From positions 1 through 62,599 of the forward strand of contig JAAPAO010000147.1 in assembly GCA_013115145.1 (NCBI GenBank): 62,599 bases of DNA. Direction: 5' to 3'. The DNA comes from Perkinsus chesapeaki ATCC PRA-425 (taxonomy: Eukaryota; Protista; Perkinsozoa). A program made the position numbers and the translations under genes. Under the pieces are notes generated by a model, which searched no databases, was not told the origin of the DNA, and was given only the letters and a program-made list of their open reading frames with translations. This document shows, one piece after another, positions 4,321 to 49,635 of the stretch; the stretch's first letter is position 1, and every line of letters begins with the position of its first letter.

Positions 4321-6067
4321 CTACAATCTTCTGTGGCATCCTTCACTAAAAGTCTGATCCGTAGGCTCCCTTTTGGAGAGGACGCTCTTCAACCTTCTCA
4401 ACCTGACAAAAGCAGCATGCTTAAGGGCATCACACAAGGCTCCTACTATTTTCTCGGAGATCTCCCTCACAGCTTCAGCTGGCTTTGAGTTCGGTCCAAG
4501 CCCGATAATCGGCAGACCTTTCTCGCAGGCAGTTTGAAGGTCATTGTTGAGCGGTATCGACCCGAGGAAAGGTACCTGAAGCAACGTACTGTATAAGCAC
4601 CAACCGTGCAGCGAAGGATCCAAGCTCACGTCCATGTCTTTGCACATCTGCTTCGCTCCGCCGGTATTCGGCATAAATATTTCGCTCACTTTACCGCAAC
4701 AGGGGCACTCGAAGCCACTCATATTTTCGATGACCCCAATTACAGGCAGACCGACTCCTCGGCAAAAGTTAATCTCTTTACGAACCTGACAAGAAATTCA
4801 TTGACTCATAATACACACCACTGTCTCACATCTTGAAGAGCCACTTCCTGTGGAGTTGTCACGAGAACAGCGCCGTCTGGTTGACAATCTTTGAGATAGT
4901 TCACCATTGATAGATGCTCATCGGAGGTTCCTAAAAGCAACCGTTTGGGACTGAACTTATCCCGACCAAAAAGGTAATCGTAAATGCACCCAAACGCAAT
5001 GATAAACAAACCCGAGTTCCAAAGATGATTTCTCGTTCGTCACCGAATCGCGGTCAAGCTCCAGAACGCAGAAATATACGCCTGCAGCACATGTCAACTA
5101 CAACGAGGGCTTTCTGACAACATATCTACTCCGCAAGGACAACGAGTTCCTGTCTGATTCGTTCGTACATAAATGAAAGTATGCATAAGCCAAATACCTC
5201 TTGAATACGGCGCTATATCTTGTCCACTCTAACACATCTAACTGAATGATGATGCTGCTGCCTACCTGGTGGAGTGTCAACCAAAAGGAAGTCTAAATTG
5301 CCCCAAGTGACATCGGTAAGGAACTGTCTAATCAAACCGTGTTTACGTGGTCCACGCCACACAATAGCATCATCCTGAACAAACCAGTCATGACCAAGCC
5401 TCCGCAGTGGGTGCACCAACCTTATTAGTCAGCATGAAACCGATGCTCATAACAGCGAGCCTATCATCGACATAAACTGGTTGCCAACCTTCAGCTGATT
5501 GGTGTACTTCACCGTCACTGATACCCAACATTCGAGGGATACTAGGTCCGCAGATATCAACATCGAGCAGGCCAACATCTTTGCCAGAGTTCGCCAAGGT
5601 GAACGCAAGCTGCGACGAAACCGTCGATTTTCCAACACCTCCTTTTCCCGATAAAATAAGAATCTTGCGTTTAACCTAAACCAACCAATGCATCCAATCG
5701 ACCTCGAAAAATATCTTACATTTCTCAATTTATAAGCGACCTCATTAACCATAGGATCTTCCTCCTTCCCAGCGCCACTAGCGCACGCCTTCTGATTCGG
5801 GCATCCAGCACATCCATCAGCCTTCCCCGCCTCGTCGCTGCCCACCCCAGGGCACGACTCTGGTGCGTTCTCCGGCACGGCGTCGGCCTGCTGCTGCTTC
5901 CCAGCGCTCACCGCAGCTTTTTGCTGACGGCGTTTGAGCTGGTAGAGTTCGTAACGATCTCGAATGGCAGGTAATAAATCACTCGATGCCCATAGAGCAA
6001 CACCAGCACCGATTGTCGCTCCAAGAATCAGCGCTCGCGTATCTAAGCTCGACGTGGAATCAGACAT
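4321..6067 (-). CDS. NBP35: Cytosolic Fe-S cluster assembly factor NBP35/NUBP1 with N-terminal hydrophobic anchor
   Basis: Motifs across exons: [36 protein letters not shown] (P-loop), [54 protein letters not shown] and [12 protein letters not shown] at 6067 is followed by [17 protein letters not shown]. Confidence 0.92.
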
Positions 6068-6080
6068 TTTAGAAGTAAAA

Positions 6081-6152
6081 GATACTCTGCGCACTATAAA
6101 GAATGATACTCCGCGCACTATCAAGAAAGATACTTTGCGCACTATATAGATT
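6081..6152. repeat. 3 x 24-nt tandem repeat upstream of NBP35
   Basis: Units gatactctgcgcactataaagaat / gatactccgcgcactatcaagaaa / gatactttgcgcactatatagatt. Confidence 0.9.
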
Positions 6153-6261
6153 TGAACTCGATACTTCTTCCTTCTTTCCCAATAGAAACGTTTAAGTGAT
6201 GATTCCAGTATAAGACAGTATAACAGTATAGACGTGTGGGGTCATCTTTCCTCCTCCTCTC

Positions 6262-9200
6262 TTAACGACGCCTCTTCCCTCGAGGGCCCTTCGAGATGCT
6301 AAGCTTAGATTTCTTGGACACCAATCGTGCCTTCTTCTTCTCCTCCTCGCCTGCCTTCACCACGCGGTCAATACTTCTGATAGATTCCGACTTAAACCTG
6401 AGACCACCAGTACCAAACACCAAGGACCAGAGACTTTCGGATTTTCGCAATTTTTGATATTTCTCCCACGTCTACATTTCGTGCTCCGCCGGATGAATTC
6501 TCCCACGGAAGGCTACACTATCTTTCAGACGTTTTGTATTCCATTGCAAAGCATATCCAGAGATGTTCCCAACTACGCGAGAGAACGCGAAAATTTCCGT
6601 AAAGATAAAATATTCGTAAATTTCGTAAGATTCTCTTGAATCCGGCAACCACCGTATCGATGACTTACTTCTCCTTCACAAGCTTTGGGTTAAGCCTGAC
6701 ATAAGCATACGGTTGAAGAGCTGCCGACTGCCTCTGAGCATCGCCGGACCCACGGTTCTTAGAACCTGATTTGACGGAAATATGGTATAATAAATACCGA
6801 TGCAAGGTGATGGTGACCTGGAGCGCATTGATCAAGTCCTTTAACTTCATGCTGAAGCCTGGCTCGACGAGCCCCCTTCTTAGCTGCCCGTATCTAATCG
6901 ACAGCCTCGCAACAACAAAGTAGTACCGTCGCCACATTCGAAATCATTCATCGATTAGCACACATTTGACAAATACAGATACCCGATGCAATAAAATAAT
7001 TCGTATTTTCCTATTTCCCACTCAACATTCAGTGCTGCCCTGCACTCAACATGTTATACAAAATTTAAAATGGCAACACTAAACAATATAAAAATACCAA
7101 TTATTCTATTTTATTGCATCGGGCCGCACACACCGAAAGTATTGGAAAATATTTATTAAAAAACGGTAAACGATGCCTTCATTTGCCGCTAGGTAAACCC
7201 TACACTGTGCTCAAGTCAGCGGGAGAGTTTCAATCAACTCCACCAGGGAGACCAGCGAATGTGATGCACGACAAAAGGCATACCTCAGCCAACCGTCCGA
7301 GGCCCTTCTTCTTTATAGCAATAGCTGCATCCTCCATTTCAGGCTTCTTATTAGTAGTAGGTTCCTCAGGCGCCTGAATCATAGCTTGAACCATGCAAGA
7401 TGCGAACTGGGTTGAGCTCACCTCAACTATAATCTTCCCATCTTCCTCCTTTAATATCCTATTCCCCTCATTAACCTTCCGTCTCCCCTTCATACTCGTT
7501 GTTTCCTTAACTCCCTTCTGTCCCCCTCGACCCAACAAATCCAAAGGCTCCTCCCCATTCTCATCGATAACGAAACCGCCCTTGCCGTCGGCACCCTTCA
7601 CCCCTCTTGTGACGTGACGCCTTTCATCATCCTCATCATCGTCATCCGAAGACTCAGACACGTCGACCTAAATCCAAACAAAGTCTAGTCGAGCTCCTTG
7701 GCTGCACTCGAAACTAAAACAATCTCACTGCCTTAAAAATATCACCCCTACACCCGAATTGAGAGGAAATTTCAACTTGTGAAATATTACAAAATTCTCA
7801 TTCTCAGGACGACCCGGCGTAGAACGCAGGTTCGAATCCCAGGTAAGACAAGTCCTTGCTTCAAGCGTCCAATGAAGAAAGCACCAATTGTGCCTTCTGT
7901 CTACTTGCGGTAGTCATTATCCTTTCTCTCACTTTGCAGTTCCCTAGACCCCCCCCCCCTCATTACCTCAGCAGCTCCCTTATCACCACCACCGGCAGCC
8001 GCTCTCTCCATAATCCTTCGACGCCTTTCACGCTCCAACTGCTTTTGAACCTATCAGACCCAAAACCTTGCATCAACCTAAGATACTCGGAATCAAATCA
8101 TTATCTACAACAATTCAACCACCAAACCAAAACGTCTGCAGTAGTTGAGGTTGATATACTACATATGACCTTAACCGGCTTTACCATCACACGAACTTCT
8201 GATATCTTATAAAATAAATCCCGATACAGAATAATAGAACATCCCGAACATCATATCCGAATATTTCCTCCAATTTAAGGAGCTTGTTGATGTTTCTTTG
8301 ACAGTTGAGCCTCTAGACTGTATAAATGGTGACAGATGTGCCAGTGATGTATATTCTCGCTCGCCCAGTGAATTTTCGCGAAACTGACAGAAATTGCGCG
8401 GTTACAAAATTATATATAAAATATCTAATTATAATATTAAATTAATTATCTAATTAAAATATCTAATATCTAATTATATATAAATTATCTAATTATTAAA
8501 ACTATATTATTACGTAAGCTGACCAATACAATAGCCTACTATCAATTCCATAACCGCTCACCACACTGCGTCTCCCCCTCATTACATGTTTAACCAATGG
8601 TCGATGCTCCTCTGGTGTTGCTGCTGCCAGCTCAGCCCAACCAACACGCTTCCCTAACTTCTCCATCAGTCTTCTCATCCCCATCTTCATTTGCATTTGG
8701 CTCCTTCCTTCCGCGCTTAATGTCAACTTAGTGTACATTTCAAGACATTCGTTATTAAGGCCATCACCAACACGCAAACAGGATCGTGCCTGAAAAAATA
8801 CTAGTTATAATTTTTTCAAAAAATTTTTCCATTTTTACGAAATTTTTACACTGATTTTGCCCACGAAACCAGAACACCACAAAGTATGAAAGTTGATAAC
8901 AGGTAAGTGAAGAATCATTTTATGATGATGTGACGGCACGCGCCACATTATTATTAATGATACTTCCATCTTCACTTACGAAAAGTAGTGATGAGTTGAC
9001 AATTTGTGTGTCTCGCATAACCTCTAGTCGAAGAAGTCCTCCCTTTCAAGCAAGTACAAAATTTCCCCCTTCACAGGCTTGATACCACCATCATCCATCT
9101 CCCATTATTACAAACAGTAATAAGCTCTTGAATAAAGGCTTCTCGATGGCCTTCCCATCAGCCCGAACCATCAACACGGTCTTAACCACTTCACGCAAGA

Positions 9201-12200
9201 GAGCCACCTTCTGTGTCGATTCTGACGATGCCCCACCCGACACTGCAAAAGGGTTGCTAGCAGTTTTCGCAGACACCGAGGCTTCGACTGGCCAGCATTG
9301 CTCTACAACCAGCCCTGACAGGCGTTGAGGAAATGCAAGATTCACCAAGATTGCAAGATTTAGGGTCTCTCACCTAGTGTCTCCACTGAAGCACATACCA
9401 TATCAATTGAACTTCCCGCTAGACCAGCGCAAACGATATTGATGAGAGCCAGCAGAGAATTATAAGATGAAGAGCATCGACGGCAAACGTCTGTGAGGAG
9501 GGCCCAACCGAGGACTCGAACCTTGAAGTGTGGGAACAGTTGATGGATGAAGTAGTCAAGATACATAGGTTATCCCAATAGGTTTAGCTTTCCCTTGAAA
9601 ATGAAGGTGAGTTTTCATCAGCGCAAAAGTGATCGAAAGATATCCTGTAGATTGCCATCAGCTCAGATGTTTGAATCGTTATAACTTATACACAGAAAAT
9701 ATTCACCAAAGCCGCAGTGCATTTCCTAACTTCGCAGAGGAGTCCTCTTCCTGGATCAACAAGTGATGGAAAACTGCAATGAAATTTCTGCTATGGAATA
9801 CTTGAAGGAAACGTCGAGTTCATTCCTTCTGAGAGCATCTCCGATCCCCTCAACCCTCCTCCTCCCACTACCTGTGCGCCTGGATCCCTAGTAGCTACCA
9901 TCGCCTCAGGTATCAATGCAGCCATCACAGCTTGCTGCTGCTCTTCATTACCCTCCACTGAATGCATCAACGATCTTGTTAACAACAGTCGATGCTTGAT
10001 CGTCTGCGCTGACGATGGCACTGTGTTGAGCAAACCCAGGAGAGTCTGGATAATCGATGACATGAATCAAGTTAGTTGAGTTGCTACTTGAACAGAATCC
10101 AAGTTGGAGAAGTCGCCGGCCTCAACTGCAATACGTATCGCTCGATAAGCAGCCTTTTGTAGCCTTGAAGGGGCCGAGGAATTCCTAAAGAGAGATGATA
10201 AAGGAGGTATATATCATCGAGGACAGGTGGGTCAAGACAATGTTAATAATGATATGGTATATTAATTCGAGCAAAACAATATTTCTGATTGCCCCACCGC
10301 TATGAGATACTGTATATTTTATGCCAAAATGTGTCATGTGAAAATCACATACAGTATGACAACATACAAATCGATCAACCGTTTCATGTATAACTGTCAC
10401 GACCCCTTTCTCTATCCCAATTACTTCATTAACGGTGTAAAAACCTTGCCAACAACCAACTGCCTCCCAGACGCCGGTACAGCCGGCAACAAAGCCAGAC
10501 AAAGCTCGCTAAGATCGGATACGACCTGATGATGATGAGGAGGAGATGATGATGATGATGATGAGAGCAAAGTGCCAAGTGTTACGGTTGACATACTTCG
10601 GTAGAGTTAGGCTTCTGGCTTTCCTGAATAAGCTGTTTCGTTACGTTAGTGAAGACAGTCTGGAGAACTTGCACACTGCAGCCACTAAAAAGACGCGACA
10701 ACCATGATTCGAACCAGGATGCAACGGGTCTTCAAACAATAGCCTTAACCACTAGACCATTTATTACCTCTTTGCCACAGCTGTAATTGCCTCCACTACA
10801 AGATCCCTAACCTTCACACTCCCCTCGCCCATATACATCGAACCTGCATCATAAACAACAATACTGGCAGCGATACTGTCATTCAAGCCGCGCTCCATAA
10901 CATCGCGAGGATACCCACAAAAACATAAAGACAGAAAGGTTTTTCCCTTTCGATAATAATATTACATCTATCCATACCTCTATATTTTATACACAGTATT
11001 ATTAGTATTATAACATCTTGTCACTTTTTTGTGCGAAGCGCTGTCTCCCTAGCTCACGTTACTCAATAAATCCTGTAAGGCTTTTATATATTTTTAATGA
11101 CTTCTGATATCCTTGCGTCAACTCCGGGAACGGCTACTAACAGCTCTAACAATACTAGTAGAATATACTATTATCAGACGATAATAGGAACAATGAATCC
11201 TAATAAAACTTTGTATCATATCAATGTATTATTAGACTGTAATCTTAATAATATATGGATTTAATTAGTTAGTTCAATTTATTAGTTATTATGAATAATA
11301 ACTAATGAATAACTCTCAATATTTAATAATAGAGATATCCAATGATAAATTAGAACTTCTAACCAACTTCCCCAACAAACGCACAGACAATATTTGATCT
11401 ATAATTATATATATCAACTTAACAGTTGTTAGTCTTTCCCCCAATTCAGCCTACATAAAGGGTTTATAAACTTGTCCCCTATCGCCAGCAGCTCCTTGGG
11501 AACAGCCTTTCTATCCGTATACTGTCTTGAGCACTCCTCACCAAACACCCTCAATGATCGCAGCGCTGACTCTTGCACCTAACCAATGAGACATGTCAAC
11601 GTGGACCTTCACCGGCCGATGAATTTCATCCTGAGCGATACACATATTGGCCAGCCGATACCACAAACCAACTTTGACAAAAGGCTTAATACATCCAAGA
11701 TATCGGCGCCAAGATATCAGTAGATAGTAATGAAACGGTTGATCGATTTAGTGTCATGTCTTCGATTCTCGTTCTAGTACTTATGTTTTAAATTTCGCTC
11801 GACAATACTCAATATTGAGTGAGACACCTAAAAAATACGAAATATTCTATTTCATTGCGTCGGGCTGTATTCCTGAACCTGCTGGGAAGGAAGTGAGTGC
11901 CGATCGAAGAATAGCTGCTGCGCCTGCATGCTTGTAATCTTGTCGGCCTGTTCCACTACAAATCCCCTTGCAAGACTACTAACAGGCCTTTCTTGATAAG
12001 TTCCTCCCTTCCCTACCATCCAACAACACTTTAACAAGGATGAGCTAGTAGGCAACAGCCTATTCTGGATGCTACTACGTATCAACGTATCACGCCCGTT
12101 GCTGAACCCCAGACAACGACCGATCAAAAGAGCACGCGGAAAAATTTCTAGATGACATCGGGGAAAACTCACGTATATTAAATCACATCGGATCAAATTA

Positions 12201-38681: not shown

Positions 38682-40904
38682 CTACTCGAAGCCAATCCTC
38701 CAGCTTCCAGAAGGTTCCTTCCATTTAAACAATACCGATTTCCCCACCATAGCACAATAATGTCCAACAACAGAAATAATAATATAATATTAACGACGTC
38801 GATGAATTGCCGCTCCATAGTTAACGCTTAACCGCCGCCGCCGCCGGGCTCCTCCTCGATTTAACATCCTCAACCCATTTACCCTCCCTAGTGCCCTCAC
38901 GATACCATATACGCACCTGATATCACCAACATCTCTATCACCTTCACGCGCCTCGAAATTATCACCTGCCCGCCTTCTTGAGCTGTAGCCAGTATTGTGC
39001 CCGTAAGGTCCCATGCCACCCTCCAGACTGGTCCAGCATTTACACCCAGATTTAGCGTTTGAGAGAGCGTAAGACAGCCTTCTATGGAGCAATCAAAGAT
39101 ACAAACTAGGTTACTTGCACCACATACAACTAAGATGTCAAATGGTCTAAGGAAAGAAAAACTAATTAAAATAACTACTACGAGATTGATAAAGAGTTGA
39201 TTTTCTTTCTTAACTCTGAGGAGGCCTAATTAACATACAACAAGGCCGCCGGCTGCATACGAATGTGACCAACATGGAACTTCTTTAGGGCTCCACTGAG
39301 GCTTAGTAATCGACCCCCCTCCTATTATTATTACCTGCATAAATTAGGTGCCCAAGCCACGTCCTTAGCAGCCACCATCCGTCCAGTACTATCCTTACAT
39401 CCTACTACACATGACCTCTCCTGCCATCTACCCCCACCACTAGCGATATCTGATCCACTCTTTCGAGCAGATTGATTATTATCCAACAGCTTCAACAGGC
39501 CACTATGCCCAACTACTGCCAATCGTTCACATTGAACCAGTGAACTTGGACACCAAGATATAGCTGTTGCACCGACTGGTAACATCCTGAAGTGGGGGGA
39601 AATTATTATCTTAAAAACAACATACTATTGAACTAGATTGTTTACAACACCACTGTATGTGATATCATCGCCATACTTTTATATAACTTTACTACATCTA
39701 CACGCTATCCATTCCAGATCTATGCATCTACCTCATTACGACAAGAGAGCAACAACAACAACAACAACAACAACAACTTGCAATCATATAAAAACGCCGC
39801 CACTGCCCATCCAACTAGCCTCCCCTAGCCACATCCTGGCCTTTTGGAAGGCGTCCTCCTCCTCCTAGTGCTGCCGAGTTCGCCACCATCATCTAGCCCC
39901 CCCTTTACTACGTTTTCTCCGTACTGTGCGTTGAGTCCCCGCTAATAATACTAGTCGGCACCGGTGCCACTGCTGCCGCTGTGTTCAGGGAATTGGCTCG
40001 AAGTCTGCTAACTGTGATGACATCCTCCAACACCCACGTGGCGAGATTCACTGGATCCATAGCTTCGTAACTAAACTGTGAATTTGGGGGATCAAACCCG
40101 ATATCCGTTCGTTTTTACGTTCTGACGCAACCGCTGGCACTGCAGGAGGCGAGCTTGAGACCCCATCGACGAGGCGCAAACTGAATGTCAGTCACTGCAT
40201 GCGAAGAGTCTGTTAAGCATGCTCTCTTTCTCCACCTAGTAGTCATAGCTGACATTGACCAGTCTAGTATCTTGCATGCTACAACCTATGATACTACCCC
40301 CATTACGACCCTTCTCGTTAGTTCTCCTCGTATCATCATCATATTCCTCACAGCTCCATATCGACACAACTCGATCCTCGCTACAACTCGCTATTATCTC
40401 CCCGAATTCAGGATAAGCCCAATCTAACAAAATGTCACAGATAAGCAAGACTACTACACCACGGTTTTTTTCTTAAAAATGGACGCTTCGAAAAATCTGC
40501 CAGTGAAGCGAGTAGACACCCCTCGCGGAGTGACCCCAGATGATAGGAAGTGAACATCCCCGCGTTATTATTACCAAGCCTCCATATCGGGGCATTATGA
40601 GCAGATGCAATACATGCCTCTAAAACCCAATCATCTCCATCCTCGCTCACTCTCCATATCAATATATGCTGTGCTGATGTGCACATCGCTCTGAGATGCT
40701 TAGTATCTTGCACGGTTAACCTCAAGATACGCCGACTCACACTTTATCTCCATAATAGCTGAAGCTGACATCATGTACATAATCGCTATCACTCGCAACC
40801 GGAACACCAAACTTCGAATCCAATAGCCTCCTCGGCCTGTGAGAGGGCTCCCCCGCTGCTGCTGCTGCTGCTGTTGGTGTTGAGGTGGGCGGCAGATCTA
40901 CCAT
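38682..40904 (-). CDS. SEH1: WD40 nucleoporin Seh1-like
   Basis: [69 protein letters not shown] and DVAWAPNLCR. The 3' end is approximate. Confidence 0.75.
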
Positions 40905-41416: not shown

Positions 41417-44230
<2,814 letters not shown>

Positions 44231-47664: not shown

Positions 47665-49635
47665 CTAGGCGTGAACGGTCCAGAGAGCTATGTTGCTCAT
47701 CGAGCAGCGGCAGTCTGTGTGGTAGCTTACTGATGGTGAAATTGACATTAACCAAAGTCCGGCAGGGATTGTAAAAAAAACAGTCATATTAGAGGGATGC
47801 AGCATCATCATCTTGGTTATCAATTGGAGCCCATTTGTTACCGATTGGACTGCTGTCACCATCAGCCTTACCAAAGGCATTACCACCCCAATTCTGGAAG
47901 TGGCACCTCAAACCAAGATACCTATAATTGAGGAAATGCAAGATGTAGCAAGATTGCAAGATATTACGGTGCTGTGGTTCCTCCTCTCATACCAATTGTA
48001 GCGGCTATCATGCCAGACATTTGAGTCCATGATTTTGCAGCGACTGTTAGACCGACACCGGAGACTGTTGAGAGACGGGCTTTAAGGAGCCAGTTCTGGG
48101 AAGGATGAAAAATAGAAGGTTTCAAGCGTTATCGAGCTTGGTATGCCGATTCATGCGGAGGGCGAGCTCACTTTGTTGGGCTGCCAAGAGGCTCCAATGG
48201 CGACCTCAGAAGTGCCAGTGTCACCATGACGATTAGCTTCCACGGCTAAGTCAACGTAATTAGCGACCGCAGCTACATGCTTGTCTTCGAGGATATTATA
48301 ACACTGAAGAGGAAGGCAGCTACAGTCTAGCAGGGAACGGTGCGAAATTATAAATCCTATGGTTAATTATCCGCGAAGGTTCGATCCCCTCACCTTTCGT
48401 TTAATAACGATTAGTTGATGATAGGCTGCCATCACCGACTCCGTGGCGCTATTGTACTCCGCCACCAGCTGATAGTCTCCCCCTTTCGAGATGTAATTAG
48501 CATTCTCCATGGCAGACGAGAATGCACCAACGCAGCGGTAACTAAAGCTTCAATGTGACCTAAAGATACTCCAGATTGCTCACCCGGAAGATTTTCCTGT
48601 CATGCTGACCCAGGCTTGGATTCCTCCCGATAAACCTTAACACGTTCACAGTGAACCACATTACTCGGTCGAACTCACCGAAGTTGGTCCGCCCCCAGAG
48701 CCATCCAGAAAACAGGGGCGCCCTTCGAGTGTCCTCAGAAATGGTTGACGATGATGATGCCACCGAGCTACCACTCACACCACAACTTTCGCTGTTAGAA
48801 GCGGTTGATGTGCTATGGTGAGATGAGGGAAGATTGCTACCAGACGCCAGGCAAATACCGTAGGATGAATTGTTATAGTCAACACGAACGCCTGACGAAC
48901 ACGAGTCGATGCGCTTGGTCGATGGTCCGTCTCACCGAGGTTGTTGTCATCGATACCAGTGCCTTGACCAATCGTACCGAATACGGCACTTGTTCCTTCA
49001 TTATTGATACCAACTGGGCGAGAAGCGAAACCACTGGCCGACAAGCCACCAGCGGTTGTAAGGCGAACGCGGCCGGCTGCGTCCAGGGGTGACCAGGGAC
49101 CGCTGAGAAGGGAGGGGGGGGGTGTTGAACGATACCAAGATAGGCTAGTGGCTGCTTACTCTTTTGGTAAGGACACCTTAATCTGTAGGCCGTCCCTTCC
49201 TGTGTCCAAACCATCAACCTTGCTCATAGCGCCTTTGAGGTCCACACAGTACGGTATCTAAGGATGTACCTCACAGACCACCGACGAGGCTGTTGTTGGC
49301 GTACAGTGACATTTGCCTCTACCTTAGCGAAGGGGGGCTGCTCTGGTGCCACCGAAAATGACAAGTGTGTCTGAAAGGAGAAGTCCGGTAGTTGGCATAA
49401 ATAACAAGTTGTTGTTTACTGCTTCTGCAACACATTCGTTAAGTACTCTCCTTCTTGCTCTTTGCAGCAGGAAGTGCTGGGAAAGTGGTTTAGTGTATCG
49501 CTCTACAGTGTCATCAATAACAGTTCGGAAACGAGGTGGTACTAGAACAAACGACGGCTCTGGTGCCGCATCAGGAGATCTGAAAACACCGCCGATGTTA
49601 CTCAGCCAGCCTCGAGCATTTGGCTGGTCCGTCAC
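47665..49635 (-). CDS. OM47-like mitochondrial outer-membrane beta-barrel (porin-related)
   Basis: PEPSFVLVPPRF, YHQLIVIKRK|CYNILEDKHVAAVANYVDL and IGASWQPNKNWLLKARL..AAKSW recall plant OM47 (from memory). The 3' end is uncertain. Confidence 0.55.
47922..47967 (-). mobile_element. 46-nt intron carrying the shared 35-nt core (copy 3)
   Basis: Core 47928-47962 reads atcttgcaatcttg-ctac-atcttgcatttcctcaa. The donor was chosen because it keeps the frame (GTTAP|YLGLRCHF). Confidence 0.55.
48321..48402 (+). pseudogene. tRNA-Ser-like element antisense in the 90-nt intron 48304-48393
   Basis: GCGA..AAATCC..CCGCGAAGG TTCGATC CCCTC ACCTTTC G TTT aligns with the class II tRNA-Ser layout. T-stem has 4/5 pairs. 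Confidence 0.6.

What the first reader, a model, noticed from the sequence alone, without database searches (positions are those of the whole stretch)
9315..9373. Introner-like 35-nt element, copy 1 (RRP12 intron)
Seen: ATCTTGC(A/T)ATCTTG-N4-ATCTTGCATTTCCTCAA occurs with identical length in short introns of three unrelated genes (RRP12, PABP, OM47-like). The copies match at 30-31 of 35 positions. All are on the sense strand and end 6-12 nt before the acceptor AG. The core has three ATCTTG repeats. Its TTTCCTCAAC resembles the U12 branch consensus TTCCTTAAC, although the donors are U2-type. Established: near-identical introns at unrelated loci are the hallmark of introner elements. Inference: a recently active intron-generating element, or a strongly conserved splicing signal.
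Basis: partly seen in the sequence, partly recalled or inferred. Interest (0 to 1): 0.78.

Follow-up and report, generated by a model that had tools for sequence, protein, structure and literature searches.

The report
Old conserved repeat inside tiny Perkinsus introns
The 35-letter repeat is real and belongs to a family of several hundred copies that nearly fill this shellfish parasite's tiny introns in either direction, but it is an old element kept by selection, not a newly jumping intron-maker or a special splicing signal.

Summary
Observation confirmed. The 35-mer sits at 9325-9359, 41591-41625 and 47928-47962 (minus strand), each in a short GT..AG intron (RRP12, PABP, an unidentified gene).

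It is one family of a few hundred copies in this 41.7 Mb Perkinsus genome: 296 core matches and 319 composite matches, against 0-2 in reversed controls. The unit is modular: 1-3 ATCTTG(C) repeats spaced 8-10 nt, then an almost invariant box ATTTYCTCAACGC.

"Recently active introner" is not supported:
- Only about 30-38 nt is shared; the rest of each intron is unrelated.
- The 4-nt spacer is as diverged (0.64 per site) as the flanks (0.70), while the blocks differ by 0.03-0.13.
- There are no target-site duplications or terminal inverted repeats.
- At both loci I could test, another Perkinsus species has the element at the same place.

"U12-like branch signal" is not supported either. Copies occur about equally in sense and antisense introns (32:27, plus some in open frames), donors are U2-type, and no U12 or U6atac RNA was found.

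Best reading: an ancient dispersed cis-element under purifying selection that works in either orientation, probably a protein-binding DNA site. In sense introns its box also lies where the branch site must be.

The scan had noted other conserved intron-repeat families in this genome, but not this one. I found no paper describing it.

The parts
9315..9373 (-). 59-nt phase-1 spliceosomal intron of the RRP12 homologue (GTGAGA...CTGTCAG) that holds copy 1
   Evidence: sequence; in-frame exon joining, 65 codons on the shorter side; P. olseni RRP12 protein P0123 is collinear across the junction ...ETLG|LVVEQCWP
9322..9361 (-). Element copy 1, three-unit form: AA-ATCTTG-CA-ATCTTG-GTGA-ATCTTGC-ATTTCCTCAACGC
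   Evidence: exact match to the 35-mer and the 19-nt core; family profile
41579..41653 (-). 75-nt phase-1 intron in the MLLE/PABC domain of the poly(A)-binding protein gene; holds copy 2
   Evidence: (flanking exons match Pfam PF00658 positions 2-34 and 36-54)
41589..41625 (-). Element copy 2, three-unit form with spacer AGCA and box ATTTCCTCAACG
47922..47967 (-). 46-nt intron (GTAATA...TTATAG) of an unidentified gene; holds copy 3 (alternative acceptor at 47894 not excluded)
   Evidence: (74-nt alternative); frame check done by hand; no Pfam match for the flanking exons
47926..47962 (-). Element copy 3, three-unit form; the box ends CAATT instead of CAACG (2 mismatches)

Best explanation
The three 35-mers belong to one family of a few hundred short composite elements in this Perkinsus genome. 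Each element has one to three ATCTTG(C) units spaced 8-10 nt apart, followed by a box ATTTYCTCAACGC. Most copies lie in the organism's tiny introns (about 43-75 nt), nearly fill them, and occur in either orientation; a few lie in open reading frames.

Shown:
- The family is old: it is present at the same sites in another Perkinsus species.
- The blocks are held constant, while the spacers, flanks, number of units and distances to the splice sites drift freely. That is purifying selection on the blocks.

Inferred:
- Conservation is equally strong in both orientations, and there is no RNA fold and no snRNA pairing. The selected function therefore most likely acts on double-stranded DNA, as a binding module for a sequence-specific protein with tandem half-sites plus a box. 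Tiny introns would be the places in a compact genome where such a site can sit without disturbing coding sequence.
- In sense-oriented copies only 3-15 nt remain before the acceptor, so the pyrimidine-rich box ...UUYCUCAAC probably also serves as the branch-site and polypyrimidine region.
- The family probably arose by an ancient dispersal of copies before the Perkinsus species split. It is not active now.
For: Family size and specificity:
- 90 copies of the 35-mer at up to 3 mismatches, 296 of the 19-nt core at up to 2 mismatches (74 exact), and 319 of the relaxed composite pattern.
- Reversed-pattern controls gave 0, 0 and 2.

Structure:
- The family has sharp edges and unrelated flanks.
- The two halves are obligately linked. 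Of 33 sites found only by the 5' half, 29 carry the box, against 2.4% by chance.
- In the box, T3, T4, C6, T7, C8, A9, A10 and C11 are 93-100% conserved, while position 5 is a free C/T.

Age:
- Spacer divergence is 0.64 per site, against 0.70 in flanks and 0.03-0.13 in blocks.
- There are no TSDs or TIRs.

Context and orientation:
- 64 of 94 copies lie in a plausible short in-frame intron, against 35% of control positions: 32 sense-only and 27 antisense-only.
- Pfam-anchored frames confirm both orientations.

Cross-species:
- The intron read-through ORF P0122 from another species reads SCNLDKSCISST just before the conserved exon. This equals the frame translation of a real three-unit copy from this genome.
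- P0121 has SVEDMQG where this genome encodes SVEEMQD from an antisense copy.
- Both are reciprocal best hits at 65-68% identity, with no closer paralog in this genome.

Other:
- The introns show no RNA structure.
- There is no excess pairing to U6, U4 or U2.
Against: - Cross-species conservation was tested at only two loci, and only at the peptide level, so synonymous-type differences are hidden.
- No binding protein is known and no known DNA motif was matched.
- Tolerance of 8-, 9- and 10-nt spacing fits an RNA-binding protein at least as well as a DNA-binding one.
- A DNA site has no obvious reason to prefer introns so strongly, unless exons and short intergenic regions exclude it.
- Intron and strand classification rests on an ORF-joining heuristic with a 35% background rate.
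Confidence: 0.55

Rival explanations
1. RNA-level splicing module. In sense introns the pyrimidine-rich element supplies the branch site and polypyrimidine tract next to the acceptor. In antisense introns the same DNA gives a purine-rich GAGGAAAUGCAAGAU tract next to the donor and acts as an intronic enhancer. Selection would then act on RNA in both orientations.
For: - The box end of the element always lies nearest a splice site: 3-15 nt from the acceptor in sense copies and about 6-10 nt from the donor in antisense copies.
- Tiny introns leave no other room for a branch site in sense copies.
- Flexible unit spacing is typical of RNA-binding proteins.
- Copies are enriched in introns.
Against: - It needs two unrelated RNA functions to constrain the same bases equally.
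- Some copies lie in long open frames.
- About 30% of copies could not be placed in an intron.
- CUCAAC pairs poorly with a canonical U2 branch-recognition sequence (my own reckoning).
- The geometry follows from intron size alone.
Confidence: 0.2
2. Fossils of an ancient introner or MITE-like burst, with no present function. The copies look conserved because of low mutation, gene conversion among copies, or generic constraints on tiny introns.
For: - Hundreds of copies lie in unrelated genes in both orientations.
- Copies cluster regionally: 8 pairs within 15 kb against 1.9 expected, and 5-7 copies in some stretches of 12-20 kb.
- Related lineages have introners (PMC7789003).
Against: - Neutral fossils shared across a split with 65-68% protein identity should be unrecognisable, yet the box is 93-100% conserved.
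- Spacers inside the element are saturated while the blocks are not, which gene-conversion tracts would not produce.
- Unit number differs between orthologous copies while the box is kept.
Confidence: 0.12
3. A recently or currently active introner that creates new introns.
For: Near-identical 35-mers in introns of three unrelated genes within 39 kb; 74 exact 19-mers genome-wide.
Against: - Flanks within the same introns are unrelated, and spacers are saturated.
- There are no TSDs or TIRs, and splice sites are not at fixed positions.
- Orthologous presence was found at 2 of 2 tested loci.
Confidence: 0.04
4. U12-type (minor spliceosome) branch-site signal, or an element that pairs with U6/U4 snRNA.
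For: - TTYCTCAAC matches TTCCTTAAC at 8 of 9 bases.
- The minor 9-spaced form contains UGCUAAUCUU, a perfect complement of this genome's U6 AAGAUUAGCA.
Against: - Donors are GTGAGA, GTGGGT and GTAATA, not RTATCCTT.
- No U12 or U6atac was found (the tool warns this does not prove absence).
- Half the copies are antisense.
- Duplex energies with U6, U4 and U2 are no better than for shuffled elements.
Confidence: 0.03

Closest known systems
Introner elements (Micromonas, Aureococcus, fungi, dinoflagellates; Amoebophrya 'invasive intronic elements', PMC7789003)
   Same: Many copies of one short sequence make up much of the introns of unrelated genes; both orientations occur; the lineage neighbours dinoflagellates, where introners abound.
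   Different: Only a 30-38 nt block is shared, not the whole intron. There are no TSDs or TIRs and no fixed splice-site positions. Internal spacers are saturated. Copies are shared at orthologous sites between species and show position-specific constraint. Some copies lie in open reading frames.
Other conserved intron-repeat families noted by this scan in the same genome (tRNA 3'-half/B-box introns; 40-43 nt hairpin-ended units)
   Same: Short elements fill tiny Perkinsus introns in either orientation, are clustered in places, and are reported as old and kept by selection.
   Different: The sequence and architecture differ: tandem direct ATCTTG units plus a box, with no inverted ends and no tRNA or B-box similarity. 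I did not test those families' claims.
U12-type branch-point sequence (TTCCTTAAC)
   Same: 8 of 9 bases match the box, and in sense copies the position is close to the acceptor.
   Different: Donors are U2-type; no U12 or U6atac snRNA was detected; half of the copies are on the antisense strand.
Clustered transcription-factor binding sites with tandem half-sites (for example SPE2-type repeats bound by ApiAP2 proteins in Plasmodium; recalled from memory, not tested)
   Same: Short direct repeats at roughly helical spacing plus an adjoining box; orientation-independent conservation; several hundred sites per genome.
   Different: No sequence match to any known motif; the location is inside introns rather than upstream of genes; no binding protein is known.

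Membership tests
Introner element | Copies at unrelated loci are near-identical over the whole intron | tested here: not met
   The information content falls to background outside about -10..+20 around the core; flanks differ at 0.70 per site and the internal spacer at 0.64 per site.
Introner element | Transposon hallmarks (TSD and/or TIR) or splice sites carried at fixed positions | tested here: not met
   No TSD above shuffled pairings (best z about 2.5 over 100 combinations), and the ends are not inverted repeats. The donor lies 0-20 nt and the acceptor 3-17 nt from the element.
Introner element | Recent gain: element-introns absent at orthologous sites in close relatives | tested here: not met
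   At 2 of 2 testable loci the element is present in another Perkinsus species. The three window copies could not be tested.
Introner element | Many copies in introns of unrelated genes, in either orientation | tested here: met
   hundreds of copies; 32 sense, 27 antisense. Hosts include RRP12, PABP, an RNB exonuclease, dynein heavy chain, an AAA_5 protein and a mitochondrial carrier.
U12-type intron signal | 5' splice site /RTATCCTT | tested here: not met
   Donors are GTGAGA, GTGGGT and GTAATA.
U12-type intron signal | Minor-spliceosome snRNAs present in the genome | tested here: inconclusive
   RF00007 (U12) and RF00619 (U6atac) gave no match, while U2, U4 and U6 were found. The tool warns that a blank does not prove absence.
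U12-type intron signal | Motif confined to the sense strand near the acceptor | tested here: not met
   Antisense copies are about as common and as well conserved as sense copies.
MITE | Terminal inverted repeats flanked by target-site duplications | tested here: not met
Selectively constrained cis-element (conserved non-coding element) | Position-specific conservation with free positions inside the element | tested here: met
   In an unbiased set, box positions are 93-100% conserved except position 5, which is C/T at 14:14; spacers are free.
Selectively constrained cis-element (conserved non-coding element) | Kept at orthologous sites across species while the surrounding non-coding sequence diverges | tested here: met
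   The core of the L110 intron is translated identically (SCISST) in P0122, at the same distance from the acceptor, while the exons are 68% identical and the unit number differs. This is one intronic locus plus one in-frame locus, at the peptide level only.
Selectively constrained cis-element (conserved non-coding element) | A trans-acting factor binds it | not testable with these tools
   Needs EMSA, DAP-seq or footprinting.

The most novel reading that the evidence does not exclude
Perkinsus uses its tiny introns as slots for orientation-independent, protein-bound DNA elements. The ATCTTG-repeat/CTCAACGC module would be one of several such families (alongside the tRNA B-box and hairpin families) that mark genes or chromatin domains and have been kept since before the species split. 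This would be a genome-wide layer of intragenic architectural or regulatory sites that explains why these introns persist.
Probability: 0.3. Interest if true: 0.75.

Novelty: new variant of a known kind. Interest (0 to 1): 0.55.

Why it matters
- Repeated introns are usually read as evidence of recent intron gain by mobile 'introners'. Here the same first impression turns out to be an old, constrained element.
- This warns against inferring activity from identical short blocks. It also points to a function for sequence inside very small introns.
- If a factor binds these sites, Perkinsus would offer a tractable case of introns retained because they carry DNA or RNA signals. Perkinsus is a transfectable parasite of oysters and clams and a sister lineage to dinoflagellates.
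- Together with the other intron-repeat families noted in this genome, the element suggests a general organising principle of the genome.

Tried and rejected
- Codon-usage scoring of the flanks to call the gene strand was too weak (85 of 97 copies ambiguous).
- Loose ORF-joining and loose splice grammar gave too many false positives. They were replaced by a stricter test with controls.
- U6/U4/U2 pairing: the perfect 10-nt complement to U6 occurs only in the minor 9-spaced form, and duplex energies are no better than for shuffled elements. Rejected.
- Spliced-leader relic: the SL exon ACCGTAGCCATCTTGGCTCAAG (PMC3101222) shares only the hexamer. Rejected.
- General hexamer enrichment: ATCTTG is only 1.24x over expectation in the window. 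Rejected.
- An inverted ATCTTG..CAAGAT family in the window: one instance, not significant.
- Rfam: nothing at the element.
- RNA folding of the three introns: z-scores from -0.5 to +0.6.
- Metagenome scan for the element: 0 matches.
- Host-gene function: diverse, no regulon.
I used ORF calls from other assemblies that read through the intron instead.
- The representative search for window copy 1 returned only a spliced P. olseni model and two spurious repeat proteins, so conservation of copy 1 itself stays untested.
- Spliced gene models were examined exon by exon, by reference.

Full report
OBSERVATION

The pattern ATCTTGCWATCTTG-N4-ATCTTGCATTTCCTCAA occurs exactly three times in the window, at 9325-9359, 41591-41625 and 47928-47962, all on the minus strand. 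No shuffle gave a match. Read on the minus strand, each copy lies in a short GT..AG intron.

- Copy 1 is in a 59-nt phase-1 intron at 9315-9373. The P. olseni RRP12 HEAT-domain protein (P0123, KAF4693760.1) is collinear across the junction...VCASVETLG|LVVEQCWP....
- Copy 2 is in a 75-nt intron at 41579-41653. It splits the MLLE/PABC domain of a poly(A)-binding protein: the upstream exon matches Pfam PF00658 positions 2-34 and the downstream exon positions 36-54.
- Copy 3 is in a 46-nt intron at 47922-47967, with an alternative acceptor at 47894. Its host gene has no Pfam match, so 'OM47-like' is unverified.

The relatives found are Perkinsus olseni and P. marinus proteins at 67-79% identity. 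The genome is therefore a Perkinsus species distinct from both. Earlier notes of the scan call it P. chesapeaki.

THE FAMILY

In the whole 41.7 Mb assembly:
- the 35-mer has 90 copies at up to 3 mismatches;
- the 3' core ATCTTGCATTTCCTCAACG has 296 copies at up to 2 mismatches, 74 of them exact;
- the 5' half ATCTTGCAATCTTG has 106 exact copies;
- a relaxed composite pattern has 319 matches, some of them nested.

Reversed-pattern controls gave 0, 0, 0 and 2.

A profile of 61 copies shows sharp edges. Information rises at about -10 and falls to background by +21 around the core, and the flanks are unrelated.

The architecture is modular. One to three ATCTTG(C) units are followed by a box. The unit next to the core lies at -10 (54 copies), -8 (34) or -9 (15). 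About 60 of 108 copies have three units and 44 have two.

The two halves are obligately linked. Of 33 sites found only through the 5' half and absent from the other lists, 29 carry the box ATTTYCTCAACGC within 32 nt, against 2.4% by chance. In this unbiased set, box positions T3, T4, C6, T7, C8, A9, A10 and C11 are 93-100% conserved, while position 5 is C or T at 14:14.

CONTEXT AND ORIENTATION

Ordinary introns here are tiny; clear PABP introns are 42-53 nt. I applied a strict test: a GT[AG]N[GT] donor, a YAG acceptor, length up to 130 nt, and at least 30 stop-free in-frame codons on both sides.
- 64 of 94 copies lie in a plausible intron, against 35% of random positions in the same loci.
- 32 copies pass only in sense orientation, 27 only in antisense, and 5 in both.

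Typical predicted introns are 43-60 nt, so the element nearly fills them. One example is GTAATCTTGCGATCTTGTTGAATCTTGTATTTCCTCAACGTAG in C2791.

Pfam-anchored frames confirm both orientations:
- sense in the window genes and next to an RNB-domain exon (L005);
- antisense next to dynein heavy chain (L017), a mitochondrial carrier (L009), a hydrolase (L025), and inside a 780-aa AAA_5 open frame (L106).

In sense copies the box end lies 3-15 nt from the acceptor. In antisense copies the same end lies about 6-10 nt from the donor. A few antisense copies lie in long open frames and read SVEEMQD. One acidic ORF (L108) has five or six such peptide repeats.

Host genes are functionally diverse. Copies are clustered: 8 pairs of exact cores lie within 15 kb against 1.9 expected (P about 9e-4), and some stretches of 12-20 kb hold 5-7 copies.

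AGE: EVIDENCE FROM WITHIN THE GENOME

In 38 three-unit copies, the mean pairwise difference per site is:
- 0.03 and 0.06 in the first two units;
- 0.13 in the core;
- 0.64 in the 4-nt spacer;
- 0.70 in the flanks.

Recent copies of a master element would share the spacer as well as the blocks, and these do not. No target-site duplication exceeds shuffled pairings, the ends are not inverted repeats, and the distances to the splice sites vary. These results contradict a recently active introner or MITE.

AGE: CROSS-SPECIES EVIDENCE

I therefore used ORF calls from other public assemblies that read through tiny in-frame introns.

(1) L110:2376-3053 is exon, then a 48-nt phase-0 intron holding a sense element, then exon, all in one frame.
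- The only hit, P0122 (68% identical), reads ...RSCNLDK-SCISST-F|QPDDEPGPGQY, where this genome reads ...[12 protein letters not shown]|QPDEEPGPGQY.
- SCISST is the frame translation of TCTTGCATTTCCTCAACG.
- A real three-unit copy of this genome (L011) translates as SCNLDKSCISS, identical to the sister peptide.
- So the orthologous intron in the other species carries the element at the same distance from the acceptor, with three units instead of two.

(2) L106:3473-5812 is a 780-aa AAA_5 frame with an antisense copy encoding SVEEMQD. The ortholog P0121 (64-65% identical over 99% of the length) has SVEDMQG at the same place.

Both proteins hit back only the queried loci in this genome, with no closer paralog. 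They are therefore orthologs from another species. The element was present before that split, and its box has been kept while unit number and surroundings changed. This evidence covers two loci at the peptide level. The three window copies could not be tested.

RNA-LEVEL IDEAS

- Rfam finds nothing at the element.
- The three introns fold no better than shuffles.
- U2, U4 and U6 were found in the genome, but U12 and U6atac were not (the tool warns that a blank does not prove absence).
- The 9-spaced minor form contains a perfect 10-nt complement of this genome's U6 AAGAUUAGCA. Over 108 copies, however, duplex energies with U6, U4 and U2 are no better than for dinucleotide shuffles.
- The spliced-leader exon shares only the hexamer (PMC3101222).
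- Half of the copies are antisense and equally conserved, so a single strand-specific RNA function cannot explain the constraint.
- In sense copies the box is nevertheless the only sequence placed where a branch site must lie, so it probably doubles as one. This is an inference.

INTERPRETATION

Shown: a modular element of a few hundred copies, mostly in tiny introns, in both orientations, with position-specific constraint, and shared between species at the two sites tested.

Inferred:
- It is maintained by purifying selection for an orientation-independent function, most simply a protein-binding site on double-stranded DNA.
- It probably spread by some copying process before the Perkinsus species diverged.

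The main rival is a dual RNA role: pyrimidine-rich near the acceptor in sense copies and purine-rich near the donor in antisense copies. Neutral fossils, a live introner and a U12 signal are poorly supported.

LITERATURE AND EARLIER NOTES

Full-text searches found no description of repeated or conserved intron elements in Perkinsus. The closest work concerns introners in Amoebophrya and dinoflagellates (PMC7789003). The scan had noted other intron-repeat families in this genome (tRNA-derived and hairpin-ended) as old and conserved, but not this family.

LIMITS

- Strand and intron calls are heuristic.
- The family size is a lower bound.

Noticed in passing
L108:3487-4428 (+) = G000:C3043, about 5486-6427: A 314-aa acidic open frame with no Pfam match contains five or six peptide repeats of the type SVEEMQDEQDL. 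They are encoded by antisense copies of the element whose units are spaced 9 nt apart, so the element reads in frame.
   Followed up: partly
L141 (G000:C3225:10815-10965) and L034 (G000:C167:64167-64300): Two element copies in opposite orientation sit in adjacent tiny introns flanking a micro-exon of about 43-55 nt. In the pre-mRNA they could form a stem of about 35 bp that loops out the exon. Among close pairs there are 2 inverted against 4-5 direct, so inverted pairs are not clearly enriched.
   Followed up: partly
L111 = G000:C2990:17856-18062 (-): The only U2 snRNA candidate (79 bits) reads ATCAAGTGTATGTATCTGTTC where canonical U2 has the GUAGUA branch-recognition sequence, and it has a local duplication of AGTGTATGTATC. 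A weak U4-like hit lies about 550 nt away (C2990:18611-18727).
   Followed up: no
window 40691-40740 and 40264-40297 (-): Candidate tiny introns contain TATCTTG...GCAAGATAC, the same hexamer as an inverted pair. They may belong to the hairpin-ended intron family noted elsewhere in this genome. Only one exact inverted instance was found in the window.
   Followed up: partly
window 8384-8513 (-): A 130-nt, very AT-rich candidate intron in the RRP12 region is built of TAATTAGATA-type tandem units.
   Followed up: no
L106:3473-5812 (+) = G000:C178:54072-56411: A 780-aa uninterrupted exon of a midasin-like AAA_5 protein is unusually long for this intron-rich genome. The antisense element in it is either coding or a 51-nt in-frame intron with a non-canonical AAG acceptor. 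The ortholog keeps the frame open too.
   Followed up: partly
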